This document shows positions 23,975-64,000 of a stretch of DNA of 64,000 nucleotides, piece after piece. Position 1 is the stretch's first letter, and every line of letters begins with the position of its first letter. The DNA comes from Lepidodermella squamata (taxonomy: Eukaryota; Animalia; Gastrotricha), in the NCBI GenBank assembly GCA_047495785.1, contig JBLDXI010000025.1, positions 2,232,001 through 2,296,000 of the forward strand. Reading direction: 5' to 3'. Both the position numbers and the translations under genes were made by a program. The notes beneath the pieces were generated by a model, which was not told the origin of the DNA, ran no database searches, and saw only the letters and a program-made list of their open reading frames with translations.

Positions 23975-25377
23975 ATGCCCAAGCCACTTCGACCTACTTC
24001 ATGTGAGGACACAGTGAAATGTCGTGTTTGTGATCTTGTTGTACCTCGGCGCCTCAAGTATCAACCCTCATGCTGCGAGGCCTGCCAAAAATTCTTCAGG
24101 CGGAATTGCCATCGAACCGATCAACTCAAGTGCAAGCACGCCAAATTAAAGCAACGCCCGGAACAATCCAAATTTGCTGTCTACGTAAGCCGGAGTATGT
24201 GTTCCCGCTGTCGGTTCGACAAATGTGTAGCAGCTGGAATGACCAGTGAGGAAAACCGCCAATAACACATTTCAATAATCTTTTTGTTAAAATTGCAGGC
24301 AAGTTTTTGATTCAAAATAATACTCACGGTATGAAATCGGAGCCCGGAAGTGAGGAAAGCGATCCATCGGATAGTAATAGTGGGATTCCGTTACTCGAGC
24401 CAGCTGAGAGCAATGCAATCACGCTCACGCTGCCAAAAACGCCCGAGTCTTTGGTCCAAAATCCAATAGAAAAGCTAGTTCGAACTTCTATTCATGCTTT
24501 CACGGTACTTCACGGGCTCGAATTTGTAGGATTAACTGATTTAGCCATAGTTTTACCTTATGTGCTAATCGATTGCAGGGTCCGCTAAAAGATAGGTCTG
24601 ATCCCGCTCAACAACTTGATTTACGCACTCGCATCGTCCAACGGATCCACTACAACGTTGAACACGTCAAAGCATACCAGTTTCAGTTCCTAGGTGAGAA
24701 AGATTTTGCAAAAATGAAGTTGAAGCAATTTTCCACTACCAGAGGCCTGGAATGACATTAACATTGATGACGTGGAGCCAGGTCGAGGGTTTGCATCCGG
24801 GAAAATGAGTTCTGTTTTCCACAACCTTTCAGGTGATTCGAAACCATCCTGGTATGGTCTGGATGATGGAGTGAAGGAGCTCATTTACCGCGACTTTCCG
24901 TATTTATCGGTAGAGATTCTCTTGTTTTGTGCTTCCATCCTATATTCAAAATTAAATCCAGGTACTGGAGAAAGAGTATCATTTGCTGAAGAAACTGCTG
25001 GGCAAGCTAGCGCCTACCTTCATCGAAGCTGCATTAGTTCTGAGCATATCGATATTTCACGGTAATTATAAGCTTTCTAGCTTTAACATTTCCTTGAGTT
25101 GAACTTTTCAGACGAGACAGGCAAAAATCAACAACTTCAGCGCTTTCAGAGAAAACTTATCGCTGCTCTGATGGGAGTAATAAGCGACAGATACGGCGAT
25201 AGCCGTGACGTTTTAAATGACCGCTTGGAGCTTCTTGGCCAAAGTATCGCGACTAATGTTCGGCTGCAAAAACGAGCGCTAACCATCTTTGAACATGAAG
25301 CCCATGATTCCCATTTTTGCAGTTCAGCTGCTGTAGCTCTTAATTTTTCACCCGGATTTCATGATACTGATCGGTGA
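23975..25377 (+). CDS. Divergent nuclear receptor NR-1 (6 exons)
   Basis: DBD CRVC..CEACQKFFRR..CSRCRFDKC..GM; five ~50-bp GT-AG introns join in frame (intron 1 at 24246-24298) to an LBD-like region (PTFIEAALVLSISIFH). Confidence 0.85.
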
Positions 25378-25935
25378 AAATACTTGCCAGAATGACATGT
25401 ATTCGCTATTTCCAGCAACAATTAATTTGTGCTCAAATGAGATATTTTCAGCCACTGCAGAATAAAACGGGTGTTCTTCGCAGCTACTGTTTTAGAACCG
25501 TACCAATAAAGGATCACCTTAGTTAGAGATGAGAGTTTCATTTGACCTTTTAAGGTGGTTCGCGTTATACTGAGCTTTAAAAAATGCTCACCTGCGCATT
25601 GTAAGCGATATGCGCAAAATTTCGCGTTCCAATTTGTTGAAATATTCAAGTCTGCGCATTAGAGCAGTAAATGTGTTTGAACTTGGCTTATTTGATGCGT
25701 GTGCTACGTAAAAACCCAGACAGTGGCTAGCTTTTAGTTCTTGTTTGGCTCATGAGCTGTACTTCTTATTTCCAAAAGTGGTACGTGTGTCTATGCCTGA
25801 TCGATAAACTGCGTCTCGACGTTTATTTTCGGCGTGAAAAACATGCGGGCTGAGTTCAAATTACGGCGCCCTTCAGAGTCATTCGTCAATTTATAAGCTA
25901 GCATTATTGTTACAAATGATTCGCGAGGAGCCATC

Positions 25936-27256
25936 ATGCTAACTCAAGTAAGCGAATGCCGTGTATGTGGCGTAGTCGTCCCGCCGCGCGACTCGTATCA
26001 GCCGAAGTGCTGTGAAGCCTGCCAAAAATTCTTCCGAAGGAATTGCCATCGCAGGGACTCCCTCAAGTGTCACCATTCGAAGAAAGGCGCAAAAGCCGAT
26101 CCTAACAAGCTGAAATACTACATCAGCCGACGAATGTGTGGCAGGTGCCGTTTCGAGAAATGCATTGCCGTTGGAATGCAGAGTGAGCGAATCCTTTTTA
26201 CCTTCTTCCTAACGGCTATAAAAGTTTCTGTTAGGTAAATTCTACGCTGACAGAACGGCTATGAGTGAAAAACCCCAAGACGACGCAGATAGCGATCGTG
26301 TTTTAACCGAAATTCCTAAAGCAGTGGCTACAAGTTTACCTGAAAAACATTTACGAACATCGATACATGCTTTCACATTACTCCACGGGCTCGAATTTGT
26401 GAGTTTTATTGCCATTCAAGACGCTATGATGAAAATTTTCGAATCAGGGCCCTTTGAAAGAGAAACAGTCGTTTGATTATGGTGACGAACAGTGGCTAAC
26501 ACTCAGCTCTCAACTTCTTAAACGAATGAAGTACAGCGTCGATCATCTTAATGCTTATAGTTTCCAGTTTATCGGTATGTCCAGTATAATGAAAACCTTA
26601 GTGTAATTACTTCCCTATTCCAGCGTCATTCGAAGAAATAAGCATGGACGACGTCATTGAAATTCGGGCCTCAGCAACATCTCACATGTGTACGATATTT
26701 CATAATCTATCCGGCAGTTCGAAGCCATCCTGGTTTGGGCTTGATGATGAGATGGTCGATTTCATGGTTCGAAAATTTCCCGACTTGGCAGTAATTAATC
26801 CTTCGATTTGCCCCAAAAATATCAATATTAACTATCTTATTATTGAAAAGGTCCTTGACAAGAAGTTCAGAAAACTGAAGATTTCGCTCGATAGATTTAA
26901 CCCAAATTTTATCGAGGCAACCTTACTACTTGCAATCGCCATTTTTCACGGTAATTTTCATTCGAGTTATCCACTATTTGCACTTTGCCCTATTTTCGCA
27001 ATTTGTAGACCAATCAGCGAAAAATCAGCGAATAAAGAAATTTCAGCGAAGGTTAGTCGAGACTATATGGGAAGTTTTCAGCGAGACGCAGCATGGCGAT
27101 GCCGAACTCGTCCGACTCCGCATGAAACTGCTCAAGCAGTGCGTTTCAAAATCAGTAGCTATTATCAGGAAAGCTCGCACCTGTTTTGATGTTGGGCGTC
27201 CTGAGTGCAAGGAGTTTCACGATTCGACTGCAGAGGCGCTGAACATTGTCGAATAG
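25936..27256 (+). CDS. Divergent nuclear receptor NR-2 (6 exons)
   Basis: Same DBD (CEACQKFFRR, CGRCRFEKC), same intron positions, LHGLEF / HNLSGSSKPSW / PNFIEATLLL blocks. Confidence 0.85.
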
Positions 27257-29795: not shown

Positions 29796-31179
29796 ATGCC
29801 TAAACCGCTCCGTTCTGCTCAAACGGTTGGCGGTGTTGTGAAATGCCGCGTTTGTGACCTGGTTGTATCGCGTCGTCCAAAGTACCAACCTTCATGCTGC
29901 GAGGCCTGCCAGAAATTCTTCAGGCGAAACTGCTATCGAGCCATTGCACTCAGATGTCGACATACCAAATTGAAGCAAAGCCCAGACCTTACCCGGTATC
30001 CTGTCTATGTAACCCGTGGTATGTGCTCCAAATGTCGATTCGACAAATGCATTGCAGCTGGAATGACAAGTGAGTATACGGCAGATAATTTCACTACAAG
30101 TGTTTTTATGGATTGCATATATATTCTCTAGGTAAATTTCTGACACAGGAGGTTGGTGGATCGAGGTCGGGGTCTATATCATCTGAAACTAAAGAAGAGA
30201 CCGCACCGTCCGAAGTCAGGATGATTTCCCTGCCACTCACACCAGAATCATTGTTCGACAATCCAACAGAAAATCTTGTTCGAACTTCAATTCATGCTTT
30301 CACCATTCTACATGGGCTTGAATTCGTAAGCTTGGAATAACTTATGAAAGGTTTACCTTCAATTGAAGCATTAATTTCAGGGTCCGCTGAAAGATAGATA
30401 CGAAACCGCTGAACAGCTCGGTTTACGTTCTCGCATAGTTCAACGGATGAGCTACAACGTTGCACATGCCAAAGCATACCAATATCAGTTTTTAGGTGAG
30501 ATATATACTTTGTCCAAAATCATGGTTAAGTAGATATTTTTCGACTTCCAGAGGCCTCGGATGACATCAGCATTGAGGACGTTGAGCCAAACCTAGGATT
30601 TGCCGCTGGAAAAATGAGTTCCGTTTATCACAACCTGTCAGGTGATTCGAAACCATCCTGGTACGGAATGGATGATAACGTGAAGGAGTTGATTTATCAG
30701 GAATTTCCGTATTTGACGGTAAAACTTATCTGTGAATTCGCGATTTCACTTTGAAATCAATTCCAGAAGCTAGAGAAAGAGTTTCATCTACTTAAGAAAC
30801 TGCTGAGCATGCTTGCTCCAACTTTTATCGAAGCTGCATTAGTTCTGAGCATATCGATATTTCACGGTAAGAAACATTTGGGTTTTAGGATTTTGTAATG
30901 TCACAAATTCCAGATGAGACTGGCAAAAATCGACGAATCCAGCGCTTGCAAAAAAAACTTATCGATGCTCTGCGGGGAGTAATAAGCGATAGATACGGCG
31001 ATAGCCCTGACGTGCTTAATAGCCGCATGGAGCTTCTTGGCCAAAGCGTTACGACTACCGTTCGGCTGCAAAAGCTAGCCCTAAATTTCTTTGAACATGA
31101 AGCGCATGACGTTGAGTTTTGCAGTTCAGCTGCTCAGGCTCTCTTTATCCAGCGGGATTCGACAATGAACTATGATTGA
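29796..31179 (+). CDS. Divergent nuclear receptor NR-4 (MPKPLR subtype, 6 exons)
   Basis: Paralog of NR-1 and NR-8; exons read in frame; TATATAAA at ~29730. Confidence 0.85.
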
Positions 31180-32345: not shown

Positions 32346-33768
32346 TTATTGAGGGATATAACTCACACGTTTGTATTTCAGAACAGAGATTGGGTCGGAT
32401 ATTATGTTATCGGGTACGCATTCACATGGGAAACATTCGCTTTTGATCACGTCGTAGCAGGAGATTCAGCTAAATTAATTGTTTTGGTGAAAGTTTTGAA
32501 CATAGGTGACGGATCATCATTGATAGATATTTCACTCAGCGAAATTCTTTGAGCGGCCAACGCGGCACCAATGCACGCGCGAAATTTCAGCAGTCTAGCC
32601 TTAACAATAGCTTTATCCCCGCTTGAGGCCAGCAGCATTTCAGACTGCAAAGCAGATAACAATCGTCGTTGAAATTGCATGACACGGGGATTTTTACCGG
32701 AAATATCTATGAAGAAAACCCTATTATTCGAGATTGTGTTCCAAAGGTTCCCTACCATAAAAAATCAAAACACTTAGCAGGAATGCAGCCTCCAGGAAAG
32801 ACGGACTGAAATCTTCGAGTTGTTGCTTCAGATGGTTGATTTTCGGCATCATCCTCTGCACGCAACAGGTTATTCAGTATTATTGCTGTAAAAACCCAAT
32901 CTTTACCGTCATCAGCCGTGGAAACGTCTCGTGCATTAGAGGCATGACCTCATCCGGCATTCCCAGCCACGACGGGTTCGCTGAGCTTGGCAAATTGTGG
33001 TAAATTGCCACCATGTGAATTATTGACGAAGCTCGCAACTCGCGGAAATCTTCTTCAGTAAGTTCGGGCGCAAGATCTGCAAAACAGAATAACAAAAAGG
33101 TCACCTATACTCTTTGCTACGCTTTGACTCACCTAGGTAGCAAAAGCCATAAGCGTTCAAGAGATTAGCGTTATGAACACCTTGATAGAATAATCTTTCT
33201 TTCAGCTGTATCGAATTCTGTATTGGGGATTCATTAAAAGGAGCCTTAAGAGAATTCAATTGTATAGAATAGTGAAACATAAATGCACGCTTATTACGAA
33301 TTCAAGGCCGTGGAGAACAGTGAAAGCCCGAATAGCTCGCCTCGCAATTATTGAATTTGGATCATCGATAACCATCTCAGGAGTCTTACTCAGAATTGGA
33401 GGCGATTCAGGCTCGTATTTGAGGAAATCTGTAACTTGTTTGATGCGTGGAACTTTAGCTTCTTCACATAAATATTTGCCTGCGGGAAAATCAATTTGTT
33501 ATTTCAAGTTTGAATGAATAACAAAATTTCGTAGCAAACTTTGCATTCCTATTGCCAGACAGCGGTCGAAACGACATTTCGCACACATTTTACGCGCGAC
33601 GTATATAGTTGCAACGGATTGGTGTGCTGATCGAGCGCGATGGCGACATTTCAGCAAACTGTAGCGTTGGCAATTTCGTCGGAAAAATTTCTGGCAGGCT
33701 TCGCAGGTTCTCGGTTGATACTTTTCACGCGGCACTACGAAGCAATCGCACACAGGGCATTTAGTTAT
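32346..33768 (-). pseudogene. Nuclear receptor NR-5, probably disabled (start ATG->ATA; 7-nt deletion truncates the tail)
   Basis: Close paralog of NR-9. The codon at 33768-33766 is ATA where paralogs have ATG, and an in-frame TAG lies upstream at 33822-33820. The C-terminus ends ESPATT* at 32447, while the NR-9-like tail (..DNIISDPISVLKYKRVSYIPQ*) persists out of frame to 32346. Confidence 0.65.
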
Positions 33769-35075: not shown

Positions 35076-36405
35076 TCATTCTGCCAATGGCGAGGACTGA
35101 AACTCAGCTATATTAAGAATCTCGGTGAAAATCTTGAACCGAGGTGACGGATCTGCCAATGCTATCAGCTTCATTTCATGCAACAAACATTTTTGAACAT
35201 CGAAAGCAGCTTGAACGCACTTGTGAAACATCAGCAACCTAGCCTCCGGCAACGATTTATCCCCACTTGCAGCATGCAGCATTTCAGCGCGAACAGCAGA
35301 CAACAACTGCCGTTGAAGTTTCATGACAAGAGCATTCTTACCGGAAATATCTATAGCAAACCGTATAATCCGCGTCGGTTTTAGTACGCGTTTTTCTTAC
35401 CGTGAAAAATTAAGACACTCAGCATGAGCGAAGCCTCCAAGAAAGTCGGTTGGAAATTTTCGAGTTGCTCCTTCAAATTAATGATTTGCGGCATCGCTTT
35501 CTGTGTGGACAATAATTGAATCAGGAATATTCTTCTATCGCTCAAAAGCATTACCGCCACCAGCTGCGGAAATGTGCGGTCGATTAGAGGCATGGCTTCA
35601 TCTGGTATTCCGAGCAATGAAGGGCTAGCTGAACTGGGCAAATTGTGATAGACTGCTGTCATGTGCATTATTGACGAAGCTCGAAGATCGCGGAACTCTT
35701 GTCCTGTAAGCTCTGGAGCAAGATCTGTTATGAAAAACAAGAATAACCTCTTCCGTGTATACTCTGATCGAACCACCTCGAAAGCAGAAGCCGTAAGAGT
35801 TGAAAAGATCAGCGGTATAAGAACTTTGTTGGACTAGTCTCTCTCGTAACTGCATCGAATCAAGTATCGAGCCATTCTTCACAGGTGCCTTTTGGCGAAC
35901 TCAGATGGTAAATAAATTCAGAGATATGAAGCAACGCCCTTACGAATTCAAGACCATGGAGAACGGTGAAAGCTCGAAGTGACCTCATCGCATATTTACT
36001 AGATCCATCAATAACCACGCCAGGAGTTAGGCCCAGAATTTGTGGCGGTTTAGGTTTGGATATAGCCTTTGCATACTGAGATCGAGCGAGTTTCGCATCA
36101 TCACATAAGAACTTGCCTGTTGAAAGTTTGAACAACTTCTGTTTTTAAGAATATAATAAACATTCAATAAACAAACTCTGCATCCCTTTTGCCAAACAGC
36201 GGTCGAAGCGACATTTCGCACACATTTTCCGCGCAACATAGATGACAGCAACCGATTGGTACGCTGATCTAGTGTGATGGCGACATTTCAGCTTACTGTA
36301 GCGTTGGCAATTTCGTCGGAAAAACTTCTGACAAGCATCGCATGTTCGCGTTTGATATTTCTCACGCGGCACAACGAAGCAATCGCAGACAAGGCATTTA
36401 GTCAT
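35076..36405 (-). CDS. Divergent nuclear receptor NR-6 (6 exons)
   Basis: DBD CLVC..CDACQKFFRR; closest to NR-10 (LPSSASPSLLGIPD, KLIAL); exons in frame. Confidence 0.85.
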
Positions 36406-36822: not shown

Positions 36823-36984
36823 ATGGACTGAATGCCTTGTGTCTGCGATTGCTTCGTTGTGCCGCGTGAAAAGTGTAAACCGCGAACCTACGAAGCTTGC
36901 CAGAAATTTTTCCGACCACATTGTCAACGCTGCAACAAGCCTAAATGTCGCCATCACACTCGATCATCACAGCGATCGGTTGCT
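36823..36984 (+). pseudogene. Degenerate nuclear receptor DBD fragment
   Basis: Nucleotide similarity to the MTK-type DBD exon (tgcgattgcttcgttgtgccgcgtgaa..gcttgccagaaatttttccgac..aaatgtcgccatcacact) with indels and Cys loss; no downstream exons. Confidence 0.8.
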
Positions 36985-37493: not shown

Positions 37494-38855
37494 ATGACTA
37501 AATGCCCTGTATGCGATTGCTTCGTAGTACCGCGTAGCAAGTACCAACCGCGAACCTGCGAAGCTTGCCAGAAATTTTTCCGACGAAATTGCCAACGTTA
37601 CACTACGATGAAATGTCGCCATAACACTCGATCGAAAAATAAATCGGCTGCTACTATCTACGTCGCGCGTAAAATGTGTGCAAAATGCCGCTTGGACCTC
37701 TGTTTGGCAGCAGGAATGCAAAGTTTCTGAATTTCATTTTACTTGTATAATATAATTGTTCCCATATTTTGAAAGGCAAATTTCCATGCCAAAATGCGAT
37801 AAGTGCTCGCATAAAACAAGCTCTACCGAAATCCACTGCAATGCTGATAAAGACGCCTGAAATGGCTATTGATAATCAACATTTGAAAATTACCATGCGA
37901 TCACTTAAGGCTTTTACTGTTCTCCACGATCTTGAATTCGTAAGAGCCTTTCTTTCATTCTTTTAAAGTATTTCAAATGTGAATTCGCCAAAGGCTCCTG
38001 TGAAGAATTCATCGATACTTGATTTGATACAGGTGCGAGAGAAACTTGTCCAACAAGCCGCTTATACCACCGATATTTTGAACCCTTACGGCTTTTGCTT
38101 TCTAGGTGAGTTGCAACACAGGATTGAAGCTTATGCGGAAATGTTTTCATCGCAGATCTTGCTCCGGAGATGACAGAACAAGACTTCCGCGATCTGCGAG
38201 CTTCTTCAACAATCCACATGGTAGCAATTTATCACAATTTGCCAAGTTCTGCCAACCCGTCATGGCTTGGAACGCCTAATGAAGTATTGCCTCTAATGGG
38301 CCACACATTTCCAAAACTAATAGCGGTAAAGATTTTTTAGATCAAGTTGACTTCAATGACCATCTGCATAGAAAGGAATGCCGAAAATCAATCATTTGAA
38401 GCAACAACTCGACGCATTCAACCCGACTTTCTTAGAGGCTGCGCTCTTGCTGAGCATTTCAATTTTTCACGGTACGACCCTGTACTGCTGACGCGGATAT
38501 AATAATAAGGCTTTTTCTAGATATTTCAGGTAGAAATGCTCGCGTCATGCAGCTTCAACGGCAATTTTCTGCCGCTCTGCGCACGGAGATGTTGAATGCT
38601 TCTAGCGGGGATAAATCATTGGCCAAGGCGAGGCTATTGAAATTTCGGGGGTGTTTTCAAGCTGCTTTTGATGTTCAAAGATTTACGCTGAGTGAATTGG
38701 CTGTAACGAAGGATCCGTCGCCCATGTTCAAGATTTTCACCAAGATTATCTATTTTGCTGAATCTGAACCACCCTTGGCTGGGGGTGGGATCATCAAAAA
38801 CGAGTCGGAACCATACGCATCTGAAACAGTTCAGCCACATGATCCTATCTACTAA
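37494..38855 (+). CDS. Divergent nuclear receptor NR-7 (duplicate of NR-3)
   Basis: DBD CEACQKFFRR; six-exon structure; high similarity to NR-3 including introns. Confidence 0.85.
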
Positions 38856-44973: not shown

Positions 44974-46392
44974 TTATTGAGGGATATAACTGACGCGTTT
45001 GTATTTCAGAACTGATATTGGGTCGGATATTATGTTATCGGGTCCAAATTCACAAGGGATACATTCGCTTTTTATCATGTCGCCTGCTATTGCAGGAGAT
45101 TCAGCTAAATTCATCGTCTCGGTGAAAGCCTTGTACAAAGGTGACGGATCATTATTCATAGCCATTTCACTCATCGAAATTCTTTGAGCGTCCAATACGG
45201 CTCGAGTGCAATCGCGAAATTTCAGCAGTCTAGCCTTAACAATAGATTTATCTCCGCTGGCAGCAAGTATCATTTCAGACTGCAATGCAGATAACATTCG
45301 CCGTTGAAATTGCACGACACGAGGATTTTTACCAGAAATATCTATAAAGAAAACCATATAATTCGAGATTGTGTTCCAAAGGATCCCTACCATAAAAAAT
45401 CAAAACACTCAGCAGGAACGCAGCCTCCAGGAATGTCGGGCTGAAATCTTCCAGTTGTTGCTTCAGATGGTTGATTTTCGGCATCATCCTCTGTGAAACA
45501 GGTTGTTCACTATTATTGCTGCAAAAAGGCAATTATACCGTTATTAGCCGCGGATGGATATCGCGCATTAGAGGCACGGCCTCATCCGGCATTCCCAGCC
45601 ACGACGGGTTCGCTGAGCTTGGCAAATTGTGGTAAATTGCAACCATGTGAATTATTGACGAAGCTCGCAACTCGCGGAAGTCTTCTTCTATAAGTTCGGG
45701 CGCAAGATCTGTGAAATCAAATAACGAAAATCTCCGTAAATAACTCCTCGACACTGGTTTTACTCACCTCTAAAACAGAAGCCGTAGGTGTTCAAGAGAT
45801 TTGCACAATAAGCAGTGTGGTAGTATAGTCGTTCTTTCAACTGTATCACATCGCGTATTGGGGATGCCCTAAAAGGGCCCTTCAGTGAATTGAATTACAT
45901 ATGAGATTTAAAATAAATACAAGCGTATTACGAATTCAAGATCATGGAGAACAGTGAAAGCCCGAAGCGATCGCATCGAAATTATTGAATTCGGTTCTTC
46001 AATAACCATCTCAGGAGTCTTACTCAGAACTAGAGACGATCCGGGCTCGGATTTTTGGAAAGCAATCACTTGATTGATGCGTGAGACCTTCGCTTCATCA
46101 CATAAATATTTGCCTGTGAACAATTTGATTTGTTTCTAAAAGTTAAGGTGATTCAAAACAAACTTTGCATTCCCGTCGCCAAACAACGATCGAAACGGCA
46201 TTTCGCACACATTTTACGCGCGACGTAGATAGTGGCAACCGATTGGTGTGCTGATCGAGCGTTATGGCGACATTTCAGCTTATTATAACTTTGGCAATTT
46301 CGTCGGAAAAATTTCTGGCAGGCCTCGCAGGTTCGCGGCTGATACTTTTCACGCGGTACTACGAAGCAATCGCACACAGGGCATTTAGTCAT
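44974..46392 (-). CDS. Divergent nuclear receptor NR-9 (duplicate of NR-5, intact)
   Basis: ATG at 46392; DBD CEACQKFFRR; six exons in frame. Confidence 0.85.
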
Positions 46393-47841: not shown

Positions 47842-47918
47842 GTTGAAATATTCAACCTGTTCTGTTACTAAAGGTTTGCTCGCTTTGAAATGATTGAAAC
47901 CTGCTGCATGAGAGGGGC

Positions 47919-47950: not shown

Positions 47951-48852
47951 CTGGTGGCAAAACTCGCTTGTATTCATAACTGGGGCATATTTTTTAACGA
48001 AGGAGTAGCTGGGACCACAGTGGATAGAACCCATCAAGGCAAACTCGTTGCTATCATTGTGCCATTATCCTTCATTCAATTGATTTATTTCATGAAGTTT
48101 TCGTTGATTTGAGGAGCGTGAACGTTTTCGGTGGCTACGGCGTCGTGTCATCTCATCACCACCAATTTGACATCAATAATTTTTTCCTTGATTACCGGTT
48201 TTTCCATTACGTTGATGAGTTTCCACGTGATGTTTTTTTGCGTCTTTCATGAAAAAAGTTAGTAAGGGAAAGCGTCTTTCTGGCCTGAGGGCAACCACGA
48301 GAGCACGACTACTCTCACTCACATCTCTCAGTTCTAGCCACCGACCACGCAAACACTACGAGGCCACGATTGCAGTGTAGGCATGAAAAAGTGACTCCTT
48401 ATGGCTGATTTGTAGCATCAAGAGGCGAGAATAGAAGTTACACATCGAGAGATTATTACCGGCGAATCAATTATCAGCGTCACTTACCACGGCGGTTCGT
48501 GATCTTCGCCGGAATGACAGAATGATCGGGGAACCTTCAATTTTGATTATCTGATCCTATTACAGCCACTAAGGCGCGGACGTGTTTCTTGAAAGTTTCG
48601 CAAATGAAATTCTGATTAAATATTCAACAGCTAAACCTAATTAACGCCATGACGTGTGAAAGTTCTTAATCTGATGACTGTTTTCCGGAATAGAAGTAGC
48701 ATGCAAGCATATCATTGATCTCGCGAATTGACGGACTTGAAACTATGTACTCCGCATATTTACTTGTTATACGCTCGACACTCGAGGGCGGGGTAGAGCA
48801 ATGTAATCGGATATTTTTTATTTCAGATTTAATATCTTCAGATCGACAAACT

Positions 48853-50172
48853 ATGACTAAATGCCCTGTATGTGATTGCTTCGTGGTACCGCGTGAGAAA
48901 TATCAACCGCGAACCTGCGATGCCTGCCAGAAATTTTTCCGACGGAATTGCCAACGCTACAGCAAGCTAAAATGTCGCCATCATGACAGACCATCATACC
49001 AATCGGTTGCTACCATCTACGTCGCCCGAAAAATGTGTGGTAAATGCCGCTTCGACCGCTGTTTGGCAACAGGAATGCAAAGTTTGTTATGGGTTATCTC
49101 AATCAAAGAAGCAATTAATTCAAACTTAAATTAGGCAAGTTTTTATGCGATGATGCGAAAATCGCTCGCAACAGACACGCAAAGGCTTTATATTTATGCG
49201 ACCCTGAACCGACACCAATTCTGAGTAAGACTCCCGAAATGGTTGTTGATGACCCGAATACGAAAATTGCGATGAGGTCACTTCGAGCTTTCACCGTTCT
49301 CCATGGTCTTGAATCCGTAAGTATCTTGTTTCCTATCTTTGAGGTAATTCCACGTATGAGTTCTTCAAAGGCCCCTATGAAGAATTCATCCGCACTCGAT
49401 ACGCTACAACTACGGGAGAGTCTACTCCAACAAACTGCTTACGCTACTGAACTTTTGAACACTTACGGCTTTTGCTTCCTCGGTGAGTTCCTTTATGATC
49501 GAAGTAAACATGGAAGATGTTACGATCTTTTTATTGATCCAGATCTTGCTCCATGCATTACAGAGCAGGACTTTTGCGATCTGCGAGCTTCATCAATAAT
49601 GCACATGGTAGCAGTTTATCACAATTTGCCAAGTTCAGCGAGCCCCTCATTGCTTGGAATCCCCGATCAGGTCGTGCCGTTATTTGACCGCTTGTTTCCG
49701 CAGTTAGTGGCGGTAATGATTTTTTGAGCGCTGGAAGAATTCGTTTAATGATCGTCCACACAGAAAGCGATGCCAAAAATAAACAATTTGAAGATGCAAC
49801 TGGACAAGTTCAACCCAACTTTCTTGGAAGCGTCGCTCATGCTGAGTGTTTTAATTTTTCACGGTAAGACCCTGACGTACTTAAACCGTGCAGGATGATA
49901 ATATAAGGTTTTCTATAGATTTTTCGGGCAAGAATGCCCCTATCATGGAACTTCAACGGCAACTTTTTTCTGCTATGCGTACTGAAATGCTGCATGCTGC
50001 CAGAGGGGATAAATCCTCAGTCGACGCTAGGCTGCTAATGTTTCGCCAGTGTGTCCAAGCTGTTATTGATTTTCAAAAGCGTACGCTGAGTGAACTGAAG
50101 CTAATAGCCCTGGAAGATGCGTCACCTCAATTCAAGATGTTCACCAATATTCTTAATTTAGGTGAATCTTAG
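48853..50172 (+). CDS. Divergent nuclear receptor NR-10 (paralog of NR-6)
   Basis: ATG at 48853; DBD CDACQKFFRR; six exons in frame. Confidence 0.85.
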
Positions 50173-52193: not shown

Positions 52194-53234
52194 ATGATTT
52201 CTGCTGTAATTTTGCCCGTACTTCTCTTCGGTCTAACTTCAGGCCAATACACAAGCCATGAAACAGGTTGGACCCATAATGGTGGTGGCGGGGTGCGCTA
52301 CATCGATCAGCAGCACGTCGGCTGCCCAGATGGCCGCGTCCTGCGCCAGTTCCAAATGCAAGGCCATGGCGACTACATGAACTACCGTTACCAGTGCCAG
52401 CAGCCCGTCAACCACGGCAACACCTGGATGAGATACTCCGGCTGGCGGGGCATGTCAAAGGTCTGGGACCTACCGAACGCCCCAGTCGATTGCGGAGCAA
52501 ACGCGATGGTCAAGAATTTCCAGCTTAAAACAAACCCAGGGAACCAAGACGAATTCCAGTATGAATACACCTGCGCCTCGGTTCAGGAGGATTCTTGCGA
52601 CAACCACCACACCCAATGGGTGGGCGAAGGCAGCGGCCGTAACTGGCAACTCACCCCCTTGGATGTCGCCTGCCCCAACGAGAGGCCCCATCTTCAAAAT
52701 TTCGTGCTTGAGGCCATCAGCGGGCAATTACGGTACAAATACCGATGCTGCTCTGCCAAGGTGATCCACGAAACCTGCGACAACCCAACCGATCAATGGG
52801 TCGTCTTCCGGACCATTGACAACTTGGGAAGCAAGATTCCGCTCAAGCTGAAATACACGAAAACCGTCGGCATGTCGACTTCGACTTCAAGCAGCGAAAG
52901 TGGCGGTTCGAAGGAGACCTTCTCCACTGAAGTTTCCGTCTCAGTCAAGCAGACGTTCTCGTCCAAGCTCGGCTACAGCTACGTCACGTATCACGACTGG
53001 CGCTACGAGGAGACGAGCACGTTTTCGGGCAGCATTCAGACTTCGGTCGAATTCGAATGCCCGGCTCGAACTGAGTGCGACATTATGCAGGTCCTAGGCC
53101 AGTGTGGCATCTATTACGTGCGAACCGATGATATCAAAGTCAACACGTACGACAAGGAAGACCCACGGCCTGGCAAGCCGAGGAACGTTGGCTACTACAA
53201 CGCGAAAAATCACACAATCCAATGGCTCCATTAA
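52194..53234 (+). CDS. Secreted 346-aa protein: three Cys/Trp repeats + putative aerolysin/ETX-MTX2-like beta-pore-forming domain
   Basis: Signal peptide; three repeats (W..G...D...V.C....L..F....Y.Y.C); S/T-rich alternating strand region YTKTVGMSTSTS..FSTEVSVSVK..LGYSY..W; intronless; TATA at ~52136; AATAAA at ~53308. Confidence 0.75.
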   Translation: MISAVILPVLLFGLTSGQYTSHETGWTHNGGGGVRYIDQQHVGCPDGRVLRQFQMQGHGDYMNYRYQCQQPVNHGNTWMRYSGWRGMSKVWDLPNAPVDCGANAMVKNFQLKTNPGNQDEFQYEYTCASVQEDSCDNHHTQWVGEGSGRNWQLTPLDVACPNERPHLQNFVLEAISGQLRYKYRCCSAKVIHETCDNPTDQWVVFRTIDNLGSKIPLKLKYTKTVGMSTSTSSSESGGSKETFSTEVSVSVKQTFSSKLGYSYVTYHDWRYEETSTFSGSIQTSVEFECPARTECDIMQVLGQCGIYYVRTDDIKVNTYDKEDPRPGKPRNVGYYNAKNHTIQWLH

Positions 53235-54012: not shown

Positions 54013-54978
54013 ATGCTTTTCAGGATTAGCTTCCTTTTGAGTGTCCTAATCGGCCTGACCTGGGGCCAATATACAAGCCATGAAACTGCGTGGACGCATG
54101 ATGGCGGTGGGGGTGTTCGATACATCGATCGACAGTATGTCGGCTGCAACGACGGCTGGGTCCTCCGTCAATTCCAGATGCAGAACAAAGGCGATTACAT
54201 GAACTACCGCTACCAATGCCAGCAGCCGTTGAACTACGCCAACTCATGGTGGCGTTACTCAGGCTGGAGGAGGATGTCAAAAGTCTGGGACCTGCCCAAC
54301 GCTCCTGTCGATTGCGGCTACAACGCCATGGTCCGGAATTTCCAGTTCAAAACTAACCCGAACAACCAGGACGAGTTTCAATACGAATACGTTTGCACAT
54401 CCATCCAACAAGACCAGTGCGACAACCACTACACGCAATGGGCGAGTGAAGGAAGCGGCCGTAACTGGCAGCTCACCCCATTCAACGTTGCTTGCCCGAA
54501 CGAGAGGCCGCACCTTCAACACTTCGTGGTCGAGGCTGTAAATGGCCAACTTAGGTACAGATACGGTTGCTGCTCATCCAAGGTGATTCATGAGACGTGC
54601 GACAACCCGACCGATCGGTGGGTCGTTTTCAAAACTGTGAGAAACATGTACAGTGGGGCTGCCTTGACTGAAACCTACAAAAAGCAAACGGGCATGTCTC
54701 GGTCAAGCGAGATTTCTAACAGTGGCGGCAGCTCTGAGCAGTTCTCCAGCGAAGTTTCGGTCAATGTTAAGAACGTGTTCGCGACTAAGCTGGGTTACAG
54801 CTACGAGACGTACCATGACTGGCGCTTTGAAGAAACTTCGTCGTTTCAGGGCTCAGTTCAAGTGGAAATGGAATTCACTTGCCCGCCTTACACGGACTGT
54901 GAACTATACCAGGTCATGGGACAATGCGGTTCTTTCTTCGTCCGCACCGATGACATAAAAGTCGTAACATCTGATTAA
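54013..54978 (+). CDS. Tandem paralog of the secreted Cys-repeat/aerolysin-like protein, 321 aa
   Basis: Colinear with 52194-53234 with conserved Cys pattern; lacks the C-terminal extension; intronless. Confidence 0.75.
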   Translation: MLFRISFLLSVLIGLTWGQYTSHETAWTHDGGGGVRYIDRQYVGCNDGWVLRQFQMQNKGDYMNYRYQCQQPLNYANSWWRYSGWRRMSKVWDLPNAPVDCGYNAMVRNFQFKTNPNNQDEFQYEYVCTSIQQDQCDNHYTQWASEGSGRNWQLTPFNVACPNERPHLQHFVVEAVNGQLRYRYGCCSSKVIHETCDNPTDRWVVFKTVRNMYSGAALTETYKKQTGMSRSSEISNSGGSSEQFSSEVSVNVKNVFATKLGYSYETYHDWRFEETSSFQGSVQVEMEFTCPPYTDCELYQVMGQCGSFFVRTDDIKVVTSD

Positions 54979-56351: not shown

Positions 56352-57603
56352 TTAGAAGCCGCCGCGGCGCTCCCAGGGTCCACGGTTGCCACCTTGGCGA
56401 CCTCCGCGCTGGCCCTTTCTGCCATGTTTCTCCTCATCGCTGTCGCTTGAATCGTCGTCGCGGTCGAAGCGTCCCTTACCACCAAAACCATCGTGAGGTT
56501 TCATGCCGCCAAATCCACCACGCTGACCACCGAATGGACGCATTTCACCGAAGCCACCATGGCGACCACCAAACGGGCCCATTTCACCGAAACCACCTTG
56601 ACGACCGCCGAATCGGCTCATTTCCCCGAATCCACCTTGACGGCCACCAAAGGGACCTGGTGGGAACCTGCCAGGACCGTGGGAGGGACCATGGCGCTCC
56701 TCGTCGCTGTCGTTGGAATCGTCATCGCGATCATGGCGTCCCTTGCCACCAAATCCACCATGGGGTTTCATTACTCCGAATCCCTCTGGGCGACCACCGA
56801 ATGGGCGCATTTCACCGAATCCACCACGACGACCACCAAAGGGGCCTGGCGGGAAAGCTGGGGGACCTGGGGGGAATCTGCCGGGACCGCGGGAGGGACC
56901 ATGGCGCTCCTCATCGCTGTCGTTGGAATCGTCATCGCGATCATGGCGTCCCTTGCCACCAAATCCACCATGGGGTTTCATTCCTCCGAATCCCTCTGGG
57001 CGACCACCGAATGGGCGCATTTCACCGAATCCACCACGACGACCACCAAAGGGGCCTGGCGGGAAAGCTGGGGGACCTGGGGGGAATCTGCCGGGACCGC
57101 GGGAGGGACCATGGCGCTCCTCATCGCTGTCGTTGGAATCGTCATCGCGATCATGGCGTCCCTTGCCACCAAATCCACCATGGGGTTTTTCATCTCCAAA
57201 ACCGGGGAATCCACCTTGACGACCACCGAATCGGTTCATTGGTCCAAAGCCACCACGGCGACCGTCAAAGGGTCCTGGAGGGAACTTGCCGCGACCGCGC
57301 GAAGGACCTCGTTCCTCGGAATCGTTCTGTTACAGCAAGGGATATAATAAGCCGATGAAATAAAGGTGTTGATAAAATCTTTACGTCATCATCATCGTCG
57401 TCGCTGCTGTCACTGCTGTCGCTGTCATCGTCATCAAATTTGCCTCCACGACGGCCGCCAAACGGACCTCCGAATCCCTTGCGGTCGCCCATCGGACCGC
57501 CGTGCCTCATTGGAGGCGCGCCTCCCATGGGTGGACGACGGGGCTCGGCCATCGCCACTGCGAACAGAGCTGCAAGAAGAGCTGCTACAACAAGACGCAT
57601 CAT
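56352..57603 (-). CDS. Secreted Gly/Phe/Pro/Arg-rich repeat protein GR2, ~397 aa; exons 57603-57385 and 57326-56352
   Basis: Signal peptide MMRLVVAALLAALFAVAMA|EP; 58-bp phase-0 intron; internal 70-aa repeat. Confidence 0.88.
56640..57190. repeat. Coding tandem repeat, 210-bp unit, ~2.5-3 nearly identical copies
   Basis: gggagggaccatggcgctcctc recurs at 56681, 56891 and 57101. Confidence 0.9.
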
Positions 57604-59684: not shown

Positions 59685-59992
59685 TTACAGTATAAGGCAA
59701 TTAAATAGTCTAAAAGAAACAGATTTATTACAGAAAGGCGAAAGAGAACCGCGAACAAGAGCCACCGAGTACTAGTGCGTATAATTTATTTCGTGCAGGG
59801 TAGTAAGCTTGAACACATCAATGAGCAATCAAGGAATATTAGAAGGGAATTTTCCTGAAATGTTAAAAATGAAATATAGTCGTATCTTCACTAATTCCGT
59901 GATGCAGAATGAGTGAAAACAAATATTCAAATCGTCTTTTCAGTAACACCGCTGCTTAGCAGCATTTGCGTTGTGGCTGCTAATCTTCGTTG

Positions 59993-60873
59993 TTAGAATC
60001 CGCCCCGGCGGCCGAAAGGTCCAGGGAATCCAGCGAAGCGGCCTTGGCTACGCTTGTTTCCGAAGCCACGGCTCATTTCTCCAAGTCCACCTTGACGACC
60101 CCCAAATGAAGGGAAAGCTGGGGGAAATGGAGGGAACATGCCACGAACAGGTGGAAAGCCAAGTCCTTCTTCATCACTGTCGCTCGAGTCGTCATCGTGG
60201 TCAACAGGTCCCTTGCCACCGTGAGGCTTCATCCCTCCTAAACCTCCGAATCCACCATGGCGACCCCCAAATGGAGGGAAAGCTGGGGGAAATGGAAATG
60301 GAGGGAACATGCCGCGAACAGGTGGAAAGCCAAGTCCTTCTTCATTACTGTCGCTTGAATCGTCATCGTGGTCAACAGGTCCCTTGCCACCGTGAGGCTT
60401 CATCCCTCCGAATCCACCATGACGACCCCCGAAACGGCTCATCCCTGCGAATCCACCATGGGGACCACCAAAGGAAACTGGAGGAACCGGCGGAAACATT
60501 CCGGGGAATCCACCGAATAGCCCTGGTGGGAACTTACCAGGGGGAAACTTGACGGGACCACGTGAAGGACCGCGTTCCTCTGCATCACTCTGTTACGGAA
60601 ACAAAAAATGGAATTAGCAATAACAAAGAAATATTCAGTTTTTACGTCATCGTCATCGTCATCATCATTGTCGCTGCTGTCTTCACCATCGAATTTGCCT
60701 CCACGAGAACCGCCGAATAGTCCACCGAATGGACCGCCAAACCCTTTCCGGCCATAGCCGCCTAGCGGACCACCATGTCCCATCGGAGGCGCGCGTCCCA
60801 TGGACGGAAAGCGGGGCTCGGCCATGGCCATCGCGAGCACTGCTGCAAATAGGGCCGCTATAACGAGACGCAT
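59993..60873 (-). CDS. Secreted Gly/Phe/Pro-rich repeat protein GR3, ~274 aa; exons 60873-60646 and 60589-59993
   Basis: Signal peptide MRLVIAALFAAVLAMAMA|EP; 56-bp intron at the same site as in GR2; two internal repeats (MKPHGGKGPVDHDDDSSDS). Confidence 0.88.
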
Positions 60874-61643: not shown

Positions 61644-61749
61644 CGCCTGTGTGAATTACGACCTACAAATGCCTACTAATGACTTGCTCGAGTGTTACTT
61701 CAAAAAAATGACAACTCCACTCCGGTGTTAGTCGTAATTCAAACAGGCC
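61644..61749. mobile_element. PIF/Harbinger-like MITE, ~106 bp
   Basis: TIR GCCTGTGTGAATTACGAC / GTCGTAATTCAAACAGGC (17/18), TAA/TTA-like flanks. Confidence 0.6.
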
Positions 61750-63346
61750 TTTAATGGCTCTAACAATGTTTGAGCGATCTCTCAAAATATTGCGGATCTC
61801 GAGTATGTTGAAGGATTCCATAGTCCCGAGTGCAGATACGATGGGAGACGATGGAAGATGCGATGGGGACTAAACACGGTGCATTTTCATTGGCGGTATT
61901 TGTTGATTGACAGTAGGTCTACATTTGGCGGTAGTCTGGGGGTTTCCTTTCAGCCAAGAATTGGTTGGATATCCTGATAAACTTGCTTAGCTTTTCTTTA
62001 TTTTTTATTGAATCAAATTTTTCCATTTTGAGACGTCAGTGGTCTAACGTTCGCTTTTCAATTTCTGAGACGATCACAATTTTTCGTGAATTCTAGTTTA
62101 CTCATGTAAGACGGAGAGATGCTGACAAAGGCCAGGCCCTGGATACACTCAAAACATCAGCTTGGAATGCATTAAATGTCAGGAAGAAAGCAAGATATAG
62201 AATCTAACTACAAGATACTATATATTAGATGTAAGAAAGATGAATAGATACTGAAACTACTTCCAGTTTCCAGAATGAGCCATGAATCCCGCTAGCCAAG
62301 TTTTCCCACGTGTTCTGATTAAAACGCCACTGCTACGTCATCTAGTGCGGGCGGACAAATGACCCACATTTATCAAGGATGAACCGTGTTTTGGACTATA
62401 TGCGAGATGCACGCAATCGATTCCCTCGGTCGATAGCATGCGCTTAACCATTGGGATGAAAATAAAAAAATAAATTAATGATATAGAAACGTACACTGGC
62501 TAGCCTGAATCAACAAGGAACAAGGCGACAAAAAATAATTCAGTCGAAAGAATTTGCTTGCGCTCATCACGATCCCTACTGATTACTTCTTCCAGTATAC
62601 TTACCGTATTTTATTACGATTTAGGTGACACTGCCCTACATTTCTTTTCAAACGAGGTCCAAGTCCTGCGTCCTGTCTTGCATTTAGTGTCTGTCTTTTA
62701 ATTTTTCGAACCTCATCCCTTATCAGTCAACCTGGTCAACCTCAAGAGTAACTGGATAAACAGCTAAAGACGCCGAATAACTGTTAGCTAGCAGAGACCA
62801 GAGACTTTGCTCAAGTATATTAAGGAGGATTAGTTGACTTCCTCTCGCAATCGCAGTATATCAAGCACCAACCAACTGTCCAGCATGTGCTCATGCAAAC
62901 CACGTTCTACTAGGCCCTACCTATTACTACAGTTTGCCCTTGTTATTTCGAATCATCTGGCTTGAAACTCGATTGTAACGGGTGATGTAAAATAATAAAA
63001 TTATTCTTAATTCTTCAAGAATTGGCGGCACGTGTTGCCACCTGGTAATTGAATTTGTCAGATTCGAAACGAATCGTGCCCGTGATCCAAATGCGAGACA
63101 TTTCTATTGCGACGCTGCATCTCACTACGTGGTAAAAGTGAACTGATTATTCGGACTTGTCGCATCGCACTGAGCCGTATCGATTTCTCTGCCGCGCCTC
63201 GCATGTCTTCTCCTCGTTTAGTAATGCGCGATAATATGTCAAAAGCTTTCAGATATTATTGGATACCTACATCTCTCTCACTGCCGCATTAATTCGCTTT
63301 TCAACCATCAAGTTCATTTGATTTTTAGTAACTGAAATAAAAAACT

Positions 63347-64000
63347 ATGTCAGGAGTAATGCTATGCAAAGTGTGTGCTACTGTTGTTCCGAGAAGACGT
63401 GGCTATCAGCCAACAACATGCGAGGCTTGTCAGAAGTTTTTTCGAAGAAACTGCCAGATGAAACGGCCGCTACGTTGCAAACACTCGCCCATGTCCGGAA
63501 ATGAGGACAACGAAGTCACGTCCTCTAACCGCCGGCACATTTGTCCTAAATGCAGGTTCGAGAAGTGTCTATCAATCGGTATGCAAAGTAAGTTGAAATA
63601 CTGCTTTATTTCCCTCGTAAATAGTTTTTCAAAACAGGCAAATTTCTGAAAGAAACATCGCATGACCCCACCTCAAAGGAGGATTCTTCAGCATCCTCTT
63701 CGAATACCGATAGTATTAAAATTAGCAAAGATCAAACTACTCCAGGTCCAGTTATAGCCAAGGAAGAAACAACATTCCTGATTCCGCTTGTTAGAGATCC
63801 CGTACTTATTGACGGATCAGCTCCTGAATTGATTATCAGAGCATCTTTGAATGCTTACCCGGAGCTTCACACGCTTGAATTCGTGAGTTTTTCACCCTAG
63901 GAACTGATTCTATTGAACCCTGTGCTTTTTTTTAGGGGTCTTTGAAAGATTTACCTCTATCCAGAATGGACATGGGAGCCATGCTTGCAGGAACCCTCCA
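63347..64000 (+). CDS. Divergent nuclear receptor NR-11, truncated by the window end
   Basis: DBD CKVC..CEACQKFFRRNC..CKH..CPKCRFEKC; same first two introns; LHTLEF block. Confidence 0.85.

What the first reader, a model, noticed from the sequence alone, without database searches (positions are those of the whole stretch)
23975..64000. Array of 11 nuclear receptors with a non-canonical DBD: C-x-H second zinc finger and (E/D)ACQK P-box
Seen in all copies: finger 1 is C-x2-C-x14-C-x2-C (canonical x13) and lacks the usual HYG; the P-box is C(E/D)ACQK; finger 2 is C-x-H-x16..20-C-x2-C with no second Cys and an invariant His (CKH, CHH, CCH, CRH). Known: canonical finger 2 is C-x5-C-x9-C-x2-C, and Cys-to-His variants are rare (reported in some flatworm NRs with other spacing). 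Inference: a lineage-specific NR family with a CHC2 finger, no normal D-box and probably a new DNA specificity.
Basis: partly seen in the sequence, partly recalled or inferred. Interest (0 to 1): 0.8.

Follow-up and report, generated by a model that had tools for sequence, protein, structure and literature searches.

The report
Nuclear receptor array with Cys3-His finger
Eleven neighbouring genes in this short-intron animal encode hormone-receptor-type gene switches whose second zinc-binding loop has lost one standard cysteine and always carries a histidine two residues after the preceding cysteine, which most likely takes over as a zinc ligand.

Summary
There are 11 DBD exons plus one decayed relic. 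Each gene has 6 exons and 5 conserved GT-AG introns of 46-62 nt. Eight are intact (348-386 aa), one lacks ATG, one is frameshifted, and one is cut by the window end. They are under purifying selection (dN/dS 0.06-0.30 in the DBD), and copy 10 is spliced in a public run.

The x14 finger and the CEACQK P-box are not private to this genome. A sister clade on environmental animal contigs has both, with a normal four-Cys finger 2. The C-x-H form itself was not found among 1.84 billion protein representatives or in JGI metagenomes.

His as a zinc ligand is supported comparatively, not physically. In the hit set, all five DBDs that lack Cys6 carry His or Cys at Cys5+2, against 4.4% His and no Cys in canonical DBDs. 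A venerid-clam clade evolved C-x-C-x17-C-x2-C independently.

The only described CHC2 nuclear-receptor finger (flatworm HR96b) has a different spacing. I rate this a new variant of a known kind. The scan noted the same family before on other DNA of this genome (s1-391734, s1-368358, s1-365940).

The parts
23975..25377 (+). Copy 1: intact 6-exon gene, 381 aa, finger 2 CKH with a 20-residue spacer
   Evidence: Gene model from the paralogue alignment; all 5 introns are GT-AG, 49-53 nt
25936..27256 (+). Copy 2: intact, 350 aa, CHH with a 20-residue spacer
   Evidence: Pfam zf-C4 33.1 bits
27924..29239 (+). Copy 3: intact, 352 aa, CCH with an 18-residue spacer; Gly in place of the extra Cys (FFRRNG)
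29796..31179 (+). Copy 4: intact, 371 aa, CRH with a 20-residue spacer
32447..33768 (-). Copy 5: reading frame open through all 6 exons (350 codons) but ATA where the paralogues have ATG; possibly newly inactivated
35076..36405 (-). Copy 6: intact, 352 aa
36832..36984 (+). Decayed DBD relic: first-finger Cys lost and the third Cys now Tyr, but CRH is still readable
37494..38855 (+). Copy 7: intact, 369 aa
41782..43164 (+). Copy 8: 1-nt deletion in exon 4 (166 nt against 167) gives a frameshift; probable pseudogene
44974..46392 (-). Copy 9: intact, 386 aa
48853..50172 (+). Copy 10: intact, 348 aa. Exons are 48853-49081, 49135-49316, 49371-49482, 49543-49712, 49764-49863 and 49919-50172
   Evidence: Introns 3 and 4 appear as GT..AG joints in contigs of run X1 only, not in the DNA run X2
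48862..48933 (+). Copy 10 finger 1 (C4, C7, C22, C25; 14-residue loop) and P-box CDACQK (residues 22-27)
   Evidence: AF2 helix 23-32 is the recognition helix
48973..49047 (+). Copy 10 finger 2: C41-R-H43 (His codon 48979-48981), 18-residue loop, C62-x2-C65
   Evidence: loop pLDDT about 65, flanks about 90
63359..64000 (+). Copy 11: the most divergent copy, CKH with a 19-residue spacer; the gene is cut off by the end of the window
   Evidence: Pfam zf-C4 46.1 bits

Best explanation
This is a tandem, mixed-orientation array of paralogous nuclear-receptor genes.

Shown:
- Each gene encodes an N-terminal DBD followed by about 270 residues.
- That C-terminal part is homologous to the C-terminal domain of relatives on environmental contigs. 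In one such relative it looks like a strongly diverged ligand-binding domain.
- The copies are old duplicates kept under purifying selection, and at least one is spliced into RNA.

Inferred mechanism:
- Finger 1 binds zinc through four Cys, with a loop one residue longer than standard.
- The recognition helix carries a P-box, (E/D)ACQK, that I found in no paper. Gln replaces the near-universal Lys, and Lys takes the last discriminating place.
- Finger 2 binds its zinc through Cys5, the His two residues later, Cys7 and Cys8. That is a Cys3His site in which a tight C-x-H knuckle replaces the usual C-x5-C D-box loop.
- About 5-7 extra residues are added before the conserved (Y/F)-x-x-R-x-M-C segment.
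- With the D-box gone and the P-box changed, these receptors probably read a different half-site and cannot use the standard D-box dimer contact.

The family is a derived branch of a wider, unnamed clade (x14 finger 1, CEACQK-FFRR, GM(K/Q)SKFL junction) whose other known members keep four Cys in finger 2.
For: Anatomy:
- 11 DBD exons share the same invariants.
- The genes have 6 exons and 5 GT-AG introns at conserved places. Eight are intact.
- Spliced joints at introns 3 and 4 of copy 10 appear in run X1 only.

Nuclear-receptor identity:
- Pfam zf-C4 is matched above its cut-off.
- The best PDB sequence matches are Rev-erb, PPAR, TR and RAR DBDs.
- The AF2 DBD model has pLDDT 83.5, and its top 50 Foldseek matches are all receptor DBDs with TM 0.57-0.68.

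Selection:
- Within the MTKC group dS is 0.35-0.9, whole-gene dN/dS is 0.21-0.34 and DBD dN/dS is 0.06-0.30. Between groups dS is saturated.
- His is CAT in 9 copies and CAC in 2.

His as a ligand:
- No other Cys, His, Asp or Glu is invariant in the loop.
- The sister clade with Cys6 has S, T, G, Y or R at +2, never His.
- Among 183 canonical DBDs of the hit set, +2 is His in 8 and Cys in none. All 5 DBDs that truly lack Cys6 have His or Cys there: CCH, CNH, CPH, CKC and CCC.
- Four venerid-clam proteins have C-[KR]-C-x17-C-x2-C, while their nearest molluscan kin are canonical.
- The extra FFRRN-C Cys is Gly in the intact copy 3 and I, A, V or L in the sister clade, so it is a core residue of helix 1 rather than a ligand.

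Clade placement:
- The window copies plus the CEACQK clade group at 98/92 support, and the CEACKR clade is sister at 95/82.
- A single origin of the window copies is not rejected (AU p 0.13).

C-terminal domain:
- The family HMM matches P0032 residues 172-407 at E 1e-20.
- For P0032's C-terminal part, 36 of 40 language-model neighbours are PF00104 clusters.
- The AF2 model matches receptor LBDs in about 47 of the top 50 Foldseek rows, and VIA-align gives Z 8-9.6 over 170-190 residues.
Against: - No coordinates of the model could be read, so the geometry of His relative to the three Cys was not checked. AlphaFold carries no zinc in any case.
- The finger-2 loop is the least confident part of the model (pLDDT about 65).
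- The 5-of-5 count comes from hits retrieved with a profile that itself contains C-x-H. Two of the five sit in one protein.
- The LBD assignment is indirect. It rests on a homologue, a model of pLDDT 57.9, Foldseek E of 0.14 or worse, and Z values in the range that helical proteins can reach by chance. Pfam PF00104 is not matched by P0032, and a small profile-profile test gave nothing.
- DNA specificity and dimerisation were not tested.
- Run X1 is only guessed to be RNA.
Confidence: 0.65

Rival explanations
1. His is not a zinc ligand. Either finger 2 uses the extra Cys after the recognition helix (FFRRN-C) as its fourth ligand, or it holds zinc with three Cys plus water. On this reading His is conserved for another reason, such as a phosphate contact or a protein-protein surface.
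For: The extra Cys is present in 10 of 11 copies and also in the relative P0018. The geometry could not be checked. In the CEACKR clade, some members that keep Cys6 also carry C-[KR]-H, so a His at +2 can exist without being needed as a ligand.
Against: The extra Cys is Gly in copy 3, which is intact and under the same constraint. It aligns with hydrophobic core residues (I, A, V, L) in the sister clade and with the I of FFRRSI in Rev-erb. Outside this genome, loss of Cys6 always goes with His or Cys at +2.
Confidence: 0.2
2. The second finger is degenerate and the family is decaying or has lost DNA binding. The motif would then be a relic with no function.
For: Two of the 11 copies are damaged (copy 5 has no ATG, copy 8 is frameshifted), and one relic fragment lies in the array.
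Against: Eight copies have intact 6-exon frames after dS of 0.35 up to saturation. DBD dN/dS is 0.06-0.30. Three Cys plus His are invariant. A spliced transcript is seen.
Confidence: 0.07
3. This is an annotation artefact. An unrecognised intron inside the DBD exon removes part of the long loop, and the mature protein has a normal finger.
For: Nuclear-receptor genes often carry an intron between the two fingers, and introns in this genome are only 46-62 nt long.
Against: The stretch from His to Cys7 is only 54-60 nt, about the minimum intron size here, and has no usable GT...AG pair that keeps Cys7 and Cys8. No Cys6 codon lies anywhere downstream. No intron-like (GT..AG skip) joint lies inside the DBD exon among the joints that one search lists (17 found, 15 shown). 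The C-terminal half of the loop is conserved at protein level.
Confidence: 0.02

Closest known systems
CHC2 second zinc finger of parasitic-flatworm HR96b (SmHR96b / Vitellogenic Factor 1), PMC8363021
   Same: It is a nuclear-receptor DBD whose second finger has one Cys replaced by His, with ligand order Cys-His-Cys-Cys. Its authors report it as unique among the animal nuclear receptors they studied.
   Different: There, His is described as replacing the second Cys of the D-box, so a D-box-length spacing is kept. A later paper by the same group writes the motif as C-X6-C-X9-H-X2-C (10.1101/2023.05.09.540016). The P-box is of the HR96 type and there is one orthologue per species. Here, His sits only two residues after Cys5, followed by an 18-20-residue loop. 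Finger 1 has 14 residues, the P-box is (E/D)ACQK, and the genes form a large tandem expansion.
Unnamed sister clade on environmental (ENA) animal contigs: P0006, P0008, P0014, P0016, P0018, P0020, P0022, P0027, P0031, P0032, P0170
   Same: It shares the 14-residue finger-1 loop (18 in P0170), the CEACQK-(F/Y)F(R/Q)R P-box, the GM(K/R)SK(F/L)L junction after the DBD (GL in P0170) and a homologous C-terminal domain (E 1e-20). Its genes are also compact, with short introns or none.
   Different: All members keep Cys6 (C-x5/6-C-x8/9-C-x2-C) and none has His at +2. I found no published description, and the host organisms are unknown.
Venerid-clam receptor clade (Ruditapes philippinarum XP_060552200.1, two Mercenaria mercenaria proteins, and P0181)
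   Same: Finger 2 has the same layout: a ligand-type residue two places after Cys5, no Cys6, then a 17-residue loop and C-x2-C.
   Different: The +2 residue is Cys, not His. Finger 1 is standard (x13, HYG) and the P-box is CEACKG. The origin is independent: their nearest molluscan relatives are canonical.
First DBD of two-DBD nuclear receptors (2DBD-NR, P-box CEACKK), PMC1810520 and PMC10497141
   Same: The P-box has an E-A-C core with Lys in the last place, and some members have a 14-residue first finger (P0005, P0017, P0049).
   Different: Those proteins have two DBDs and a canonical C4 second finger. In my tree they fall outside the clade that holds the window genes.
Site 2 of RING fingers (C-x-H ... 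C-x2-C); from my own knowledge, not tested here
   Same: A Cys and a His one residue apart, together with a distant C-x2-C pair, chelate one zinc. This shows that such a knuckle is sterically possible.
   Different: The fold is unrelated (cross-brace), so this is an analogy only.

Membership tests
Nuclear receptor superfamily | DBD matching Pfam zf-C4 (PF00105) above the gathering score | tested here: met
   All five copies tested score 28.8-46.1 bits against a cut-off of 21.1
Nuclear receptor superfamily | Eight conserved Cys spaced C-x2-C-x13-C-x2-C and C-x5-C-x9-C-x2-C | tested here: not met
   Finger 1 has x14. Cys6 is absent in all 11 copies, and His sits at Cys5+2
Nuclear receptor superfamily | DBD fold: two zinc modules with a recognition helix and a third helix | tested here: met
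   AF2 pLDDT 83.5 with helices 23-32 and 63-72. The top 50 Foldseek PDB matches are all receptor DBDs, TM 0.57-0.68
Nuclear receptor superfamily | C-terminal ligand-binding domain (helical sandwich, PF00104) | tested here: inconclusive
   The homologue P0032 (E 1e-20 to the window C-terminal part) gives no PF00104 match. The window's spliced C-terminal sequences could not be scanned. Language-model neighbours of P0032 are 36/40 PF00104 clusters. A low-confidence model matches mostly receptor LBDs, with Z up to 9.6
Flatworm HR96b CHC2 group | His in place of the second D-box Cys with D-box-type spacing, and an HR96-type P-box | tested here: not met
   Here the motif is C-x-H with an 18-20-residue loop and the P-box is (E/D)ACQK. 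The group is described in PMC8363021
2DBD-NR (NR7) | Two DBDs in one protein, the first with P-box CEACKK | tested here: not met
   The gene models have a single DBD, the P-box is CEACQK, and the tree places the CEACKK DBDs outside the clade
Unnamed x14/CEACQK clade (environmental contigs) | 14-residue finger 1, C(E/D)ACQK-FFRR, SKFL junction and a homologous C-terminal domain | tested here: met
   joint clade support 98/92
Nematode supplementary receptors (HNF4-derived) | Descent from HNF4 in a DBD/LBD phylogeny | not tested
   No curated NR0-NR6 reference set was at hand. The best PDB sequence matches are NR1 members (Rev-erb, PPAR, TR, RAR), and HNF4 is weaker

The most novel reading that the evidence does not exclude
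C-x-(His/Cys) followed by an enlarged loop is a recurrent, viable alternative build of the second zinc module of nuclear receptors. It has arisen independently at least in this animal's CEACQK clade (with His) and in venerid clams (with Cys), and possibly in a mite and in other unplaced proteins. Each time it abolishes the D-box. That would create receptors with new dimerisation rules and, in the His form, a zinc site of different affinity and pH or redox sensitivity. This genome would then hold by far the largest expansion of the His form, alongside a P-box not recorded in the literature.
Probability: 0.45. Interest if true: 0.6.

Novelty: new variant of a known kind. Interest (0 to 1): 0.5.

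Why it matters
The eight-cysteine DBD is the most conserved feature of nuclear receptors. The D-box between Cys5 and Cys6 sets how receptors pair on DNA. The only published His-containing second finger (flatworm HR96b/VF1) is called unique by its authors, and its function is unknown.

This family has been expanded and kept under selection. It has a different Cys3His layout, no D-box and a P-box that I found in no paper. It is therefore a natural experiment on how far the domain can be rebuilt.

The comparative pattern found here makes the zinc-ligand question directly testable: whenever Cys6 is lost, a His or Cys appears at +2. A small recombinant domain and two point mutants would settle it. 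The result would also improve the motif filters used to count receptors in new genomes, because filters that demand C-x5-C-x9-C-x2-C would miss all of these genes.

Tried and rejected
- **Longest-ORF gene models.** A splice model that maximises ORF length ran through true stops and into neighbouring genes. I replaced it with models based on paralogue alignment.
- **Word-indexed protein search.** The search with the DBD exon found nothing.
- **JGI metagenome scan.** The scan with the DBD profile found no relative.
- **Profile-profile comparison.** Comparing the C-terminal alignment with five weakly annotated LBDs gave nothing (probability 0.9%).
- **Exon pieces as alignment rows.** MAFFT misplaced exons 2, 3 and 6 when single exon translations were aligned to P0032 (A3). 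That alignment was not used for folding. Only exons 4 and 5, which aligned correctly, were kept (A4).
- **Zinc-site geometry.** No model coordinates are exposed to scripts, so the geometry could not be measured.
- **Naming the organisms.** Attempts to name the window's organism or that of the sister clade failed. Run names are coded, the ENA contigs carry no taxon, and an Atlas look-up of a neighbouring gene was uninformative.
- **Literature.** No paper contains CEACQK or CDACQK. None links a C-x2-C-x14-C-x2-C first finger to nuclear receptors.


Full report
**Observation**

A six-frame scan for C-x2-C-x12..15-C-x2-C finds exactly eleven hits in the window. All lie between 23.9 and 63.6 kb: eight on the + strand and three on the - strand. 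Aligned (A1), the eleven share these features:
- C-x2-C-x14-C-x2-C in finger 1;
- the P-box C(E/D)ACQK followed by FFRRN;
- seven residues, then C-x-H;
- 18, 19 or 20 residues, then C-x2-C-R-(F/L)-x-x-C-...-GM.

No Cys stands where Cys6 normally does. The spacer is 18-20 residues, not 16-20. Pfam zf-C4 is matched above its gathering score by the five copies tested (28.8-46.1 bits against 21.1). The best PDB sequence matches are the Rev-erb, PPAR, TR and RAR DBDs. A twelfth, decayed DBD fragment lies at 36832-36984 (+).

**Gene structure and state**

DNA alignments of the paralogues show six exons and five introns at conserved places. All introns are GT-AG and 46-62 nt long.
- Eight genes are complete and open: copies 1, 2, 3, 4, 6, 7, 9 and 10, at 348-386 aa.
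- Copy 5 is open throughout but has ATA where the others have ATG.
- Copy 8 has a 1-nt deletion in exon 4.
- Copy 11 runs off the window.

Contigs of one public run (X1, guessed to be RNA) join 49482 to 49543 and 49712 to 49764. These are exactly introns 3 and 4 of copy 10. The DNA run X2 does not show these joints. So at least copy 10 is transcribed and spliced as modelled.

Nei-Gojobori estimates:
- dS is 0.35-0.9 within the MTKC-type group (copies 3, 5, 6, 7, 9, 10) and saturated between groups.
- dN/dS is 0.21-0.34 for whole genes and 0.06-0.30 for the DBD.

These are old duplicates under purifying selection.

**Fold of the DBD**

I folded the copy-10 DBD with an alignment of 50 sequences (A2). 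The model has mean pLDDT 83.5. Helices fall at residues 23-32 (recognition helix) and 63-72. Confidence is lower (about 65) in the finger-2 loop, residues 41-60. The top 50 Foldseek matches in the PDB are all nuclear-receptor DBDs (TM 0.57-0.68, probability 1.00). Model coordinates are not exposed to scripts, so the zinc-site geometry could not be measured.

**Relatives**

A word-indexed search with the DBD exon was blank. A profile of the eleven DBDs was then scored against 1.84 billion representative proteins. It gave 531 hits at E of 0.001 or better, but none at 1e-30 or better. None of the top 150 has the x14 / (E/D)ACQK / C-x-H-x18-20 combination of this family. A scan of JGI metagenome contigs was also blank. 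The C-x-H form is therefore not represented in those collections.

The other two hallmarks are not unique to this genome.
- **CEACQK clade.** Ten hits from ENA environmental assemblies (P0006, P0008, P0014, P0016, P0018, P0020, P0022, P0027, P0031, P0032), plus P0170 found later, have the CEACQK-(F/Y)F(R/Q)R P-box and the GM(K/R)SK(F/L)L junction (GL in P0170). The ten have the 14-residue first finger; P0170 has 18. All keep a normal four-Cys second finger, C-x5/6-C-x8/9-C-x2-C.
- **CEACKR clade.** A second group (P0050, P0059, P0064 and others) has x14 and Cys6, plus a loop of about 20 residues before Cys7.

In a maximum-likelihood tree of the DBDs, the window genes and the CEACQK clade form one group (98/92). 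The CEACKR clade is its sister (95/82). The CEACKK-type DBDs typical of two-DBD receptors fall outside. Holding the eleven window genes together as one clade is not rejected (AU p 0.13). A single loss of Cys6 is therefore compatible with the data.

**Is the His a zinc ligand?**

There is no direct evidence. Several lines of indirect evidence agree.
1. Cys5, His, Cys7 and Cys8 are invariant in all eleven copies across saturated synonymous divergence. His is encoded by CAT nine times and CAC twice.
2. No other possible ligand is conserved in the loop.
3. The extra Cys after the recognition helix (FFRRN-C) is Gly in the intact copy 3. It is I, A, V or L in the sister clade, and it aligns with the core Ile of FFRRSI in Rev-erb. 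It looks like a core residue, not a ligand.
4. Sister-clade members, which keep Cys6, never have His at +2.
5. In the hit set, 183 DBDs have a canonical Cys5/Cys6 pair. Their +2 residue is His in 8 (4.4%) and never Cys. The five DBDs that truly lack a Cys6 all have His or Cys at +2:
   - two DBDs of P0003 (CCH and CNH);
   - P0094 (CPH);
   - P0128 from the clam Ruditapes philippinarum (CKC);
   - P0046 from the mite Dinothrombium tinctorium (CCC).
6. A follow-up search with the clam DBD shows that C-[KR]-C-x17-C-x2-C is conserved in four proteins of Ruditapes, Mercenaria and one unnamed source. Thirteen nearest molluscan relatives are canonical, C-x5-C-x9-C.

The clam result is an independent origin of the same layout with Cys in the place of His. 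It is what one expects if that place supplies the fourth ligand.

Caveats: the hit list was retrieved with a profile that contains C-x-H, and two of the five cases are in one protein. From general knowledge, a Cys and a His one residue apart chelate the same zinc in site 2 of RING fingers, so the knuckle is sterically possible. I put the His-ligand reading at about 0.7.

**C-terminal domain**

An HMM of the window proteins' post-DBD region matches P0032 residues 172-407 at E 1e-20. P0032 is a 435-aa intronless gene on contig L001. P0032 does not reach Pfam PF00104; the window's spliced C-terminal sequences could not be scanned. A small profile-profile test was negative.

For P0032 residues 160-435:
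- 36 of 40 language-model neighbours are PF00104 clusters, with scores of 0.92-0.93.
- An AF2 model is all-helical but of low confidence (pLDDT 57.9).
- About 47 of its 50 best Foldseek matches are receptor LBDs, although E is 0.14 or worse.
- An exhaustive VIA-align search puts GR, VDR, oyster ER, CAR, Rev-erb, SF-1, ERR and DAX-1 at the top, with Z 8.1-9.6 over 108-190 residues.

That Z range can occur by chance for helical proteins. The dominance of one family over most of the domain makes a strongly diverged LBD the best reading.

**Comparison with what is known**

- No paper in the library contains CEACQK or CDACQK.
- CEACKK is the published signature of the first DBD of two-DBD receptors.
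- The only described His-containing second finger is the CHC2 motif of parasitic-flatworm HR96b (VF1). There, His is described as replacing the second Cys of the D-box. Its authors state that the motif is absent from the receptors of all other animals they studied (PMC8363021). A later paper by the same group writes it as C-X6-C-X9-H-X2-C.
- Either way, the spacing, the P-box, the finger-1 length and the gene-family context all differ from the present family.

This is therefore a new variant of a known kind of thing: a lineage-specific, divergent receptor expansion with a second, differently built Cys3His finger. It is not a new class of protein.

**Earlier notes of this scan**

The scan noted the same family on other pieces of this genome: s1-391734, s1-368358, s1-365940 and s1-431974.
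- I re-derived the His reading and the bivalve C-x-C parallel of s1-391734 independently.
- I also re-derived the 14-residue finger and the hard-to-recognise LBD of s1-368358.

Taken together, those notes suggest several dozen family members genome-wide. I could not verify that count.

**Verdict**

The Cys3His finger and the loss of the D-box are well supported comparatively, but zinc ligation and a new DNA specificity remain to be shown. Two of the three hallmarks belong to a wider clade. Interest is moderate.

Noticed in passing
window 36832-36984 (+): A decayed DBD fragment of the same family lies between copies 6 and 7. Several Cys are lost but CRH is still readable. It is a pseudogene relic of a twelfth copy.
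   Followed up: partly
window 39617-41102 (-): Two adjacent ORFs (242 and 241 aa) match Pfam Phage_integrase and DUF3504.
   Followed up: partly
window 52194-53234 (+) and 54013-54978 (+): Two tandem paralogous ORFs (346 and 321 aa) have no Pfam match. They sit in the 13-kb gap between copies 10 and 11. GC rises to 0.48 there.
   Followed up: no
window 47035-47973 (-), 56352-57358 and 59947-60592: Three similar stretches carry overlapping ORFs on both strands and have no Pfam match for the two ORFs tested. This is probably a repeated element. The blocks 55.3-57.8 kb and 58.9-61.0 kb are duplicates of each other.
   Followed up: no
window 814-3468 (-): A single 884-aa ORF encodes a receptor tyrosine kinase with a discoidin-domain-receptor DS-like domain (Pfam PK_Tyr_Ser-Thr 161 bits, DDR1-2_DS-like 75 bits).
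   Followed up: no
window 19284-20708 (-) and 21101-22177 (-): There is an LRAT-like plus AIG1/GTPase fusion ORF (474 aa, also noted as s1-430097) and a neighbouring MFS transporter ORF (358 aa).
   Followed up: no
P0003 (876 aa, UniParc UPI00074D98E5): This predicted protein has five nuclear-receptor DBDs in a row and an LBD-like tail. Two of its DBDs lack Cys6 and have C-C-H and C-N-H. It may be a fused prediction of tandem genes or a true multi-DBD receptor. Its organism is unknown.
   Followed up: no
P0128, P0180, P0181, P0182 (Ruditapes philippinarum, Mercenaria mercenaria): This venerid-clam receptor clade has a second finger of C-[KR]-C-x17-C-x2-C and P-box CEACKG. Databases annotate its members as RAR-, NR1D2- or ROR-like. 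Their nearest molluscan relatives are canonical.
   Followed up: partly
L001 and L002 (ENA environmental contigs): Sister-clade receptor genes sit on compact animal contigs. They are intronless (P0032) or have one gap of about 70 nt between the DBD ORF and the C-terminal ORF (P0162). Two receptor genes lie in tandem on L001. The host animals are unidentified.
   Followed up: partly
window 46393 / 48930 (run X1): One X1 contig joins the DBD exon of copy 9 (- strand) to that of copy 10 (+ strand), with 17 foreign letters between them. This is most likely an assembly chimera between paralogues, not a transcript.
   Followed up: no
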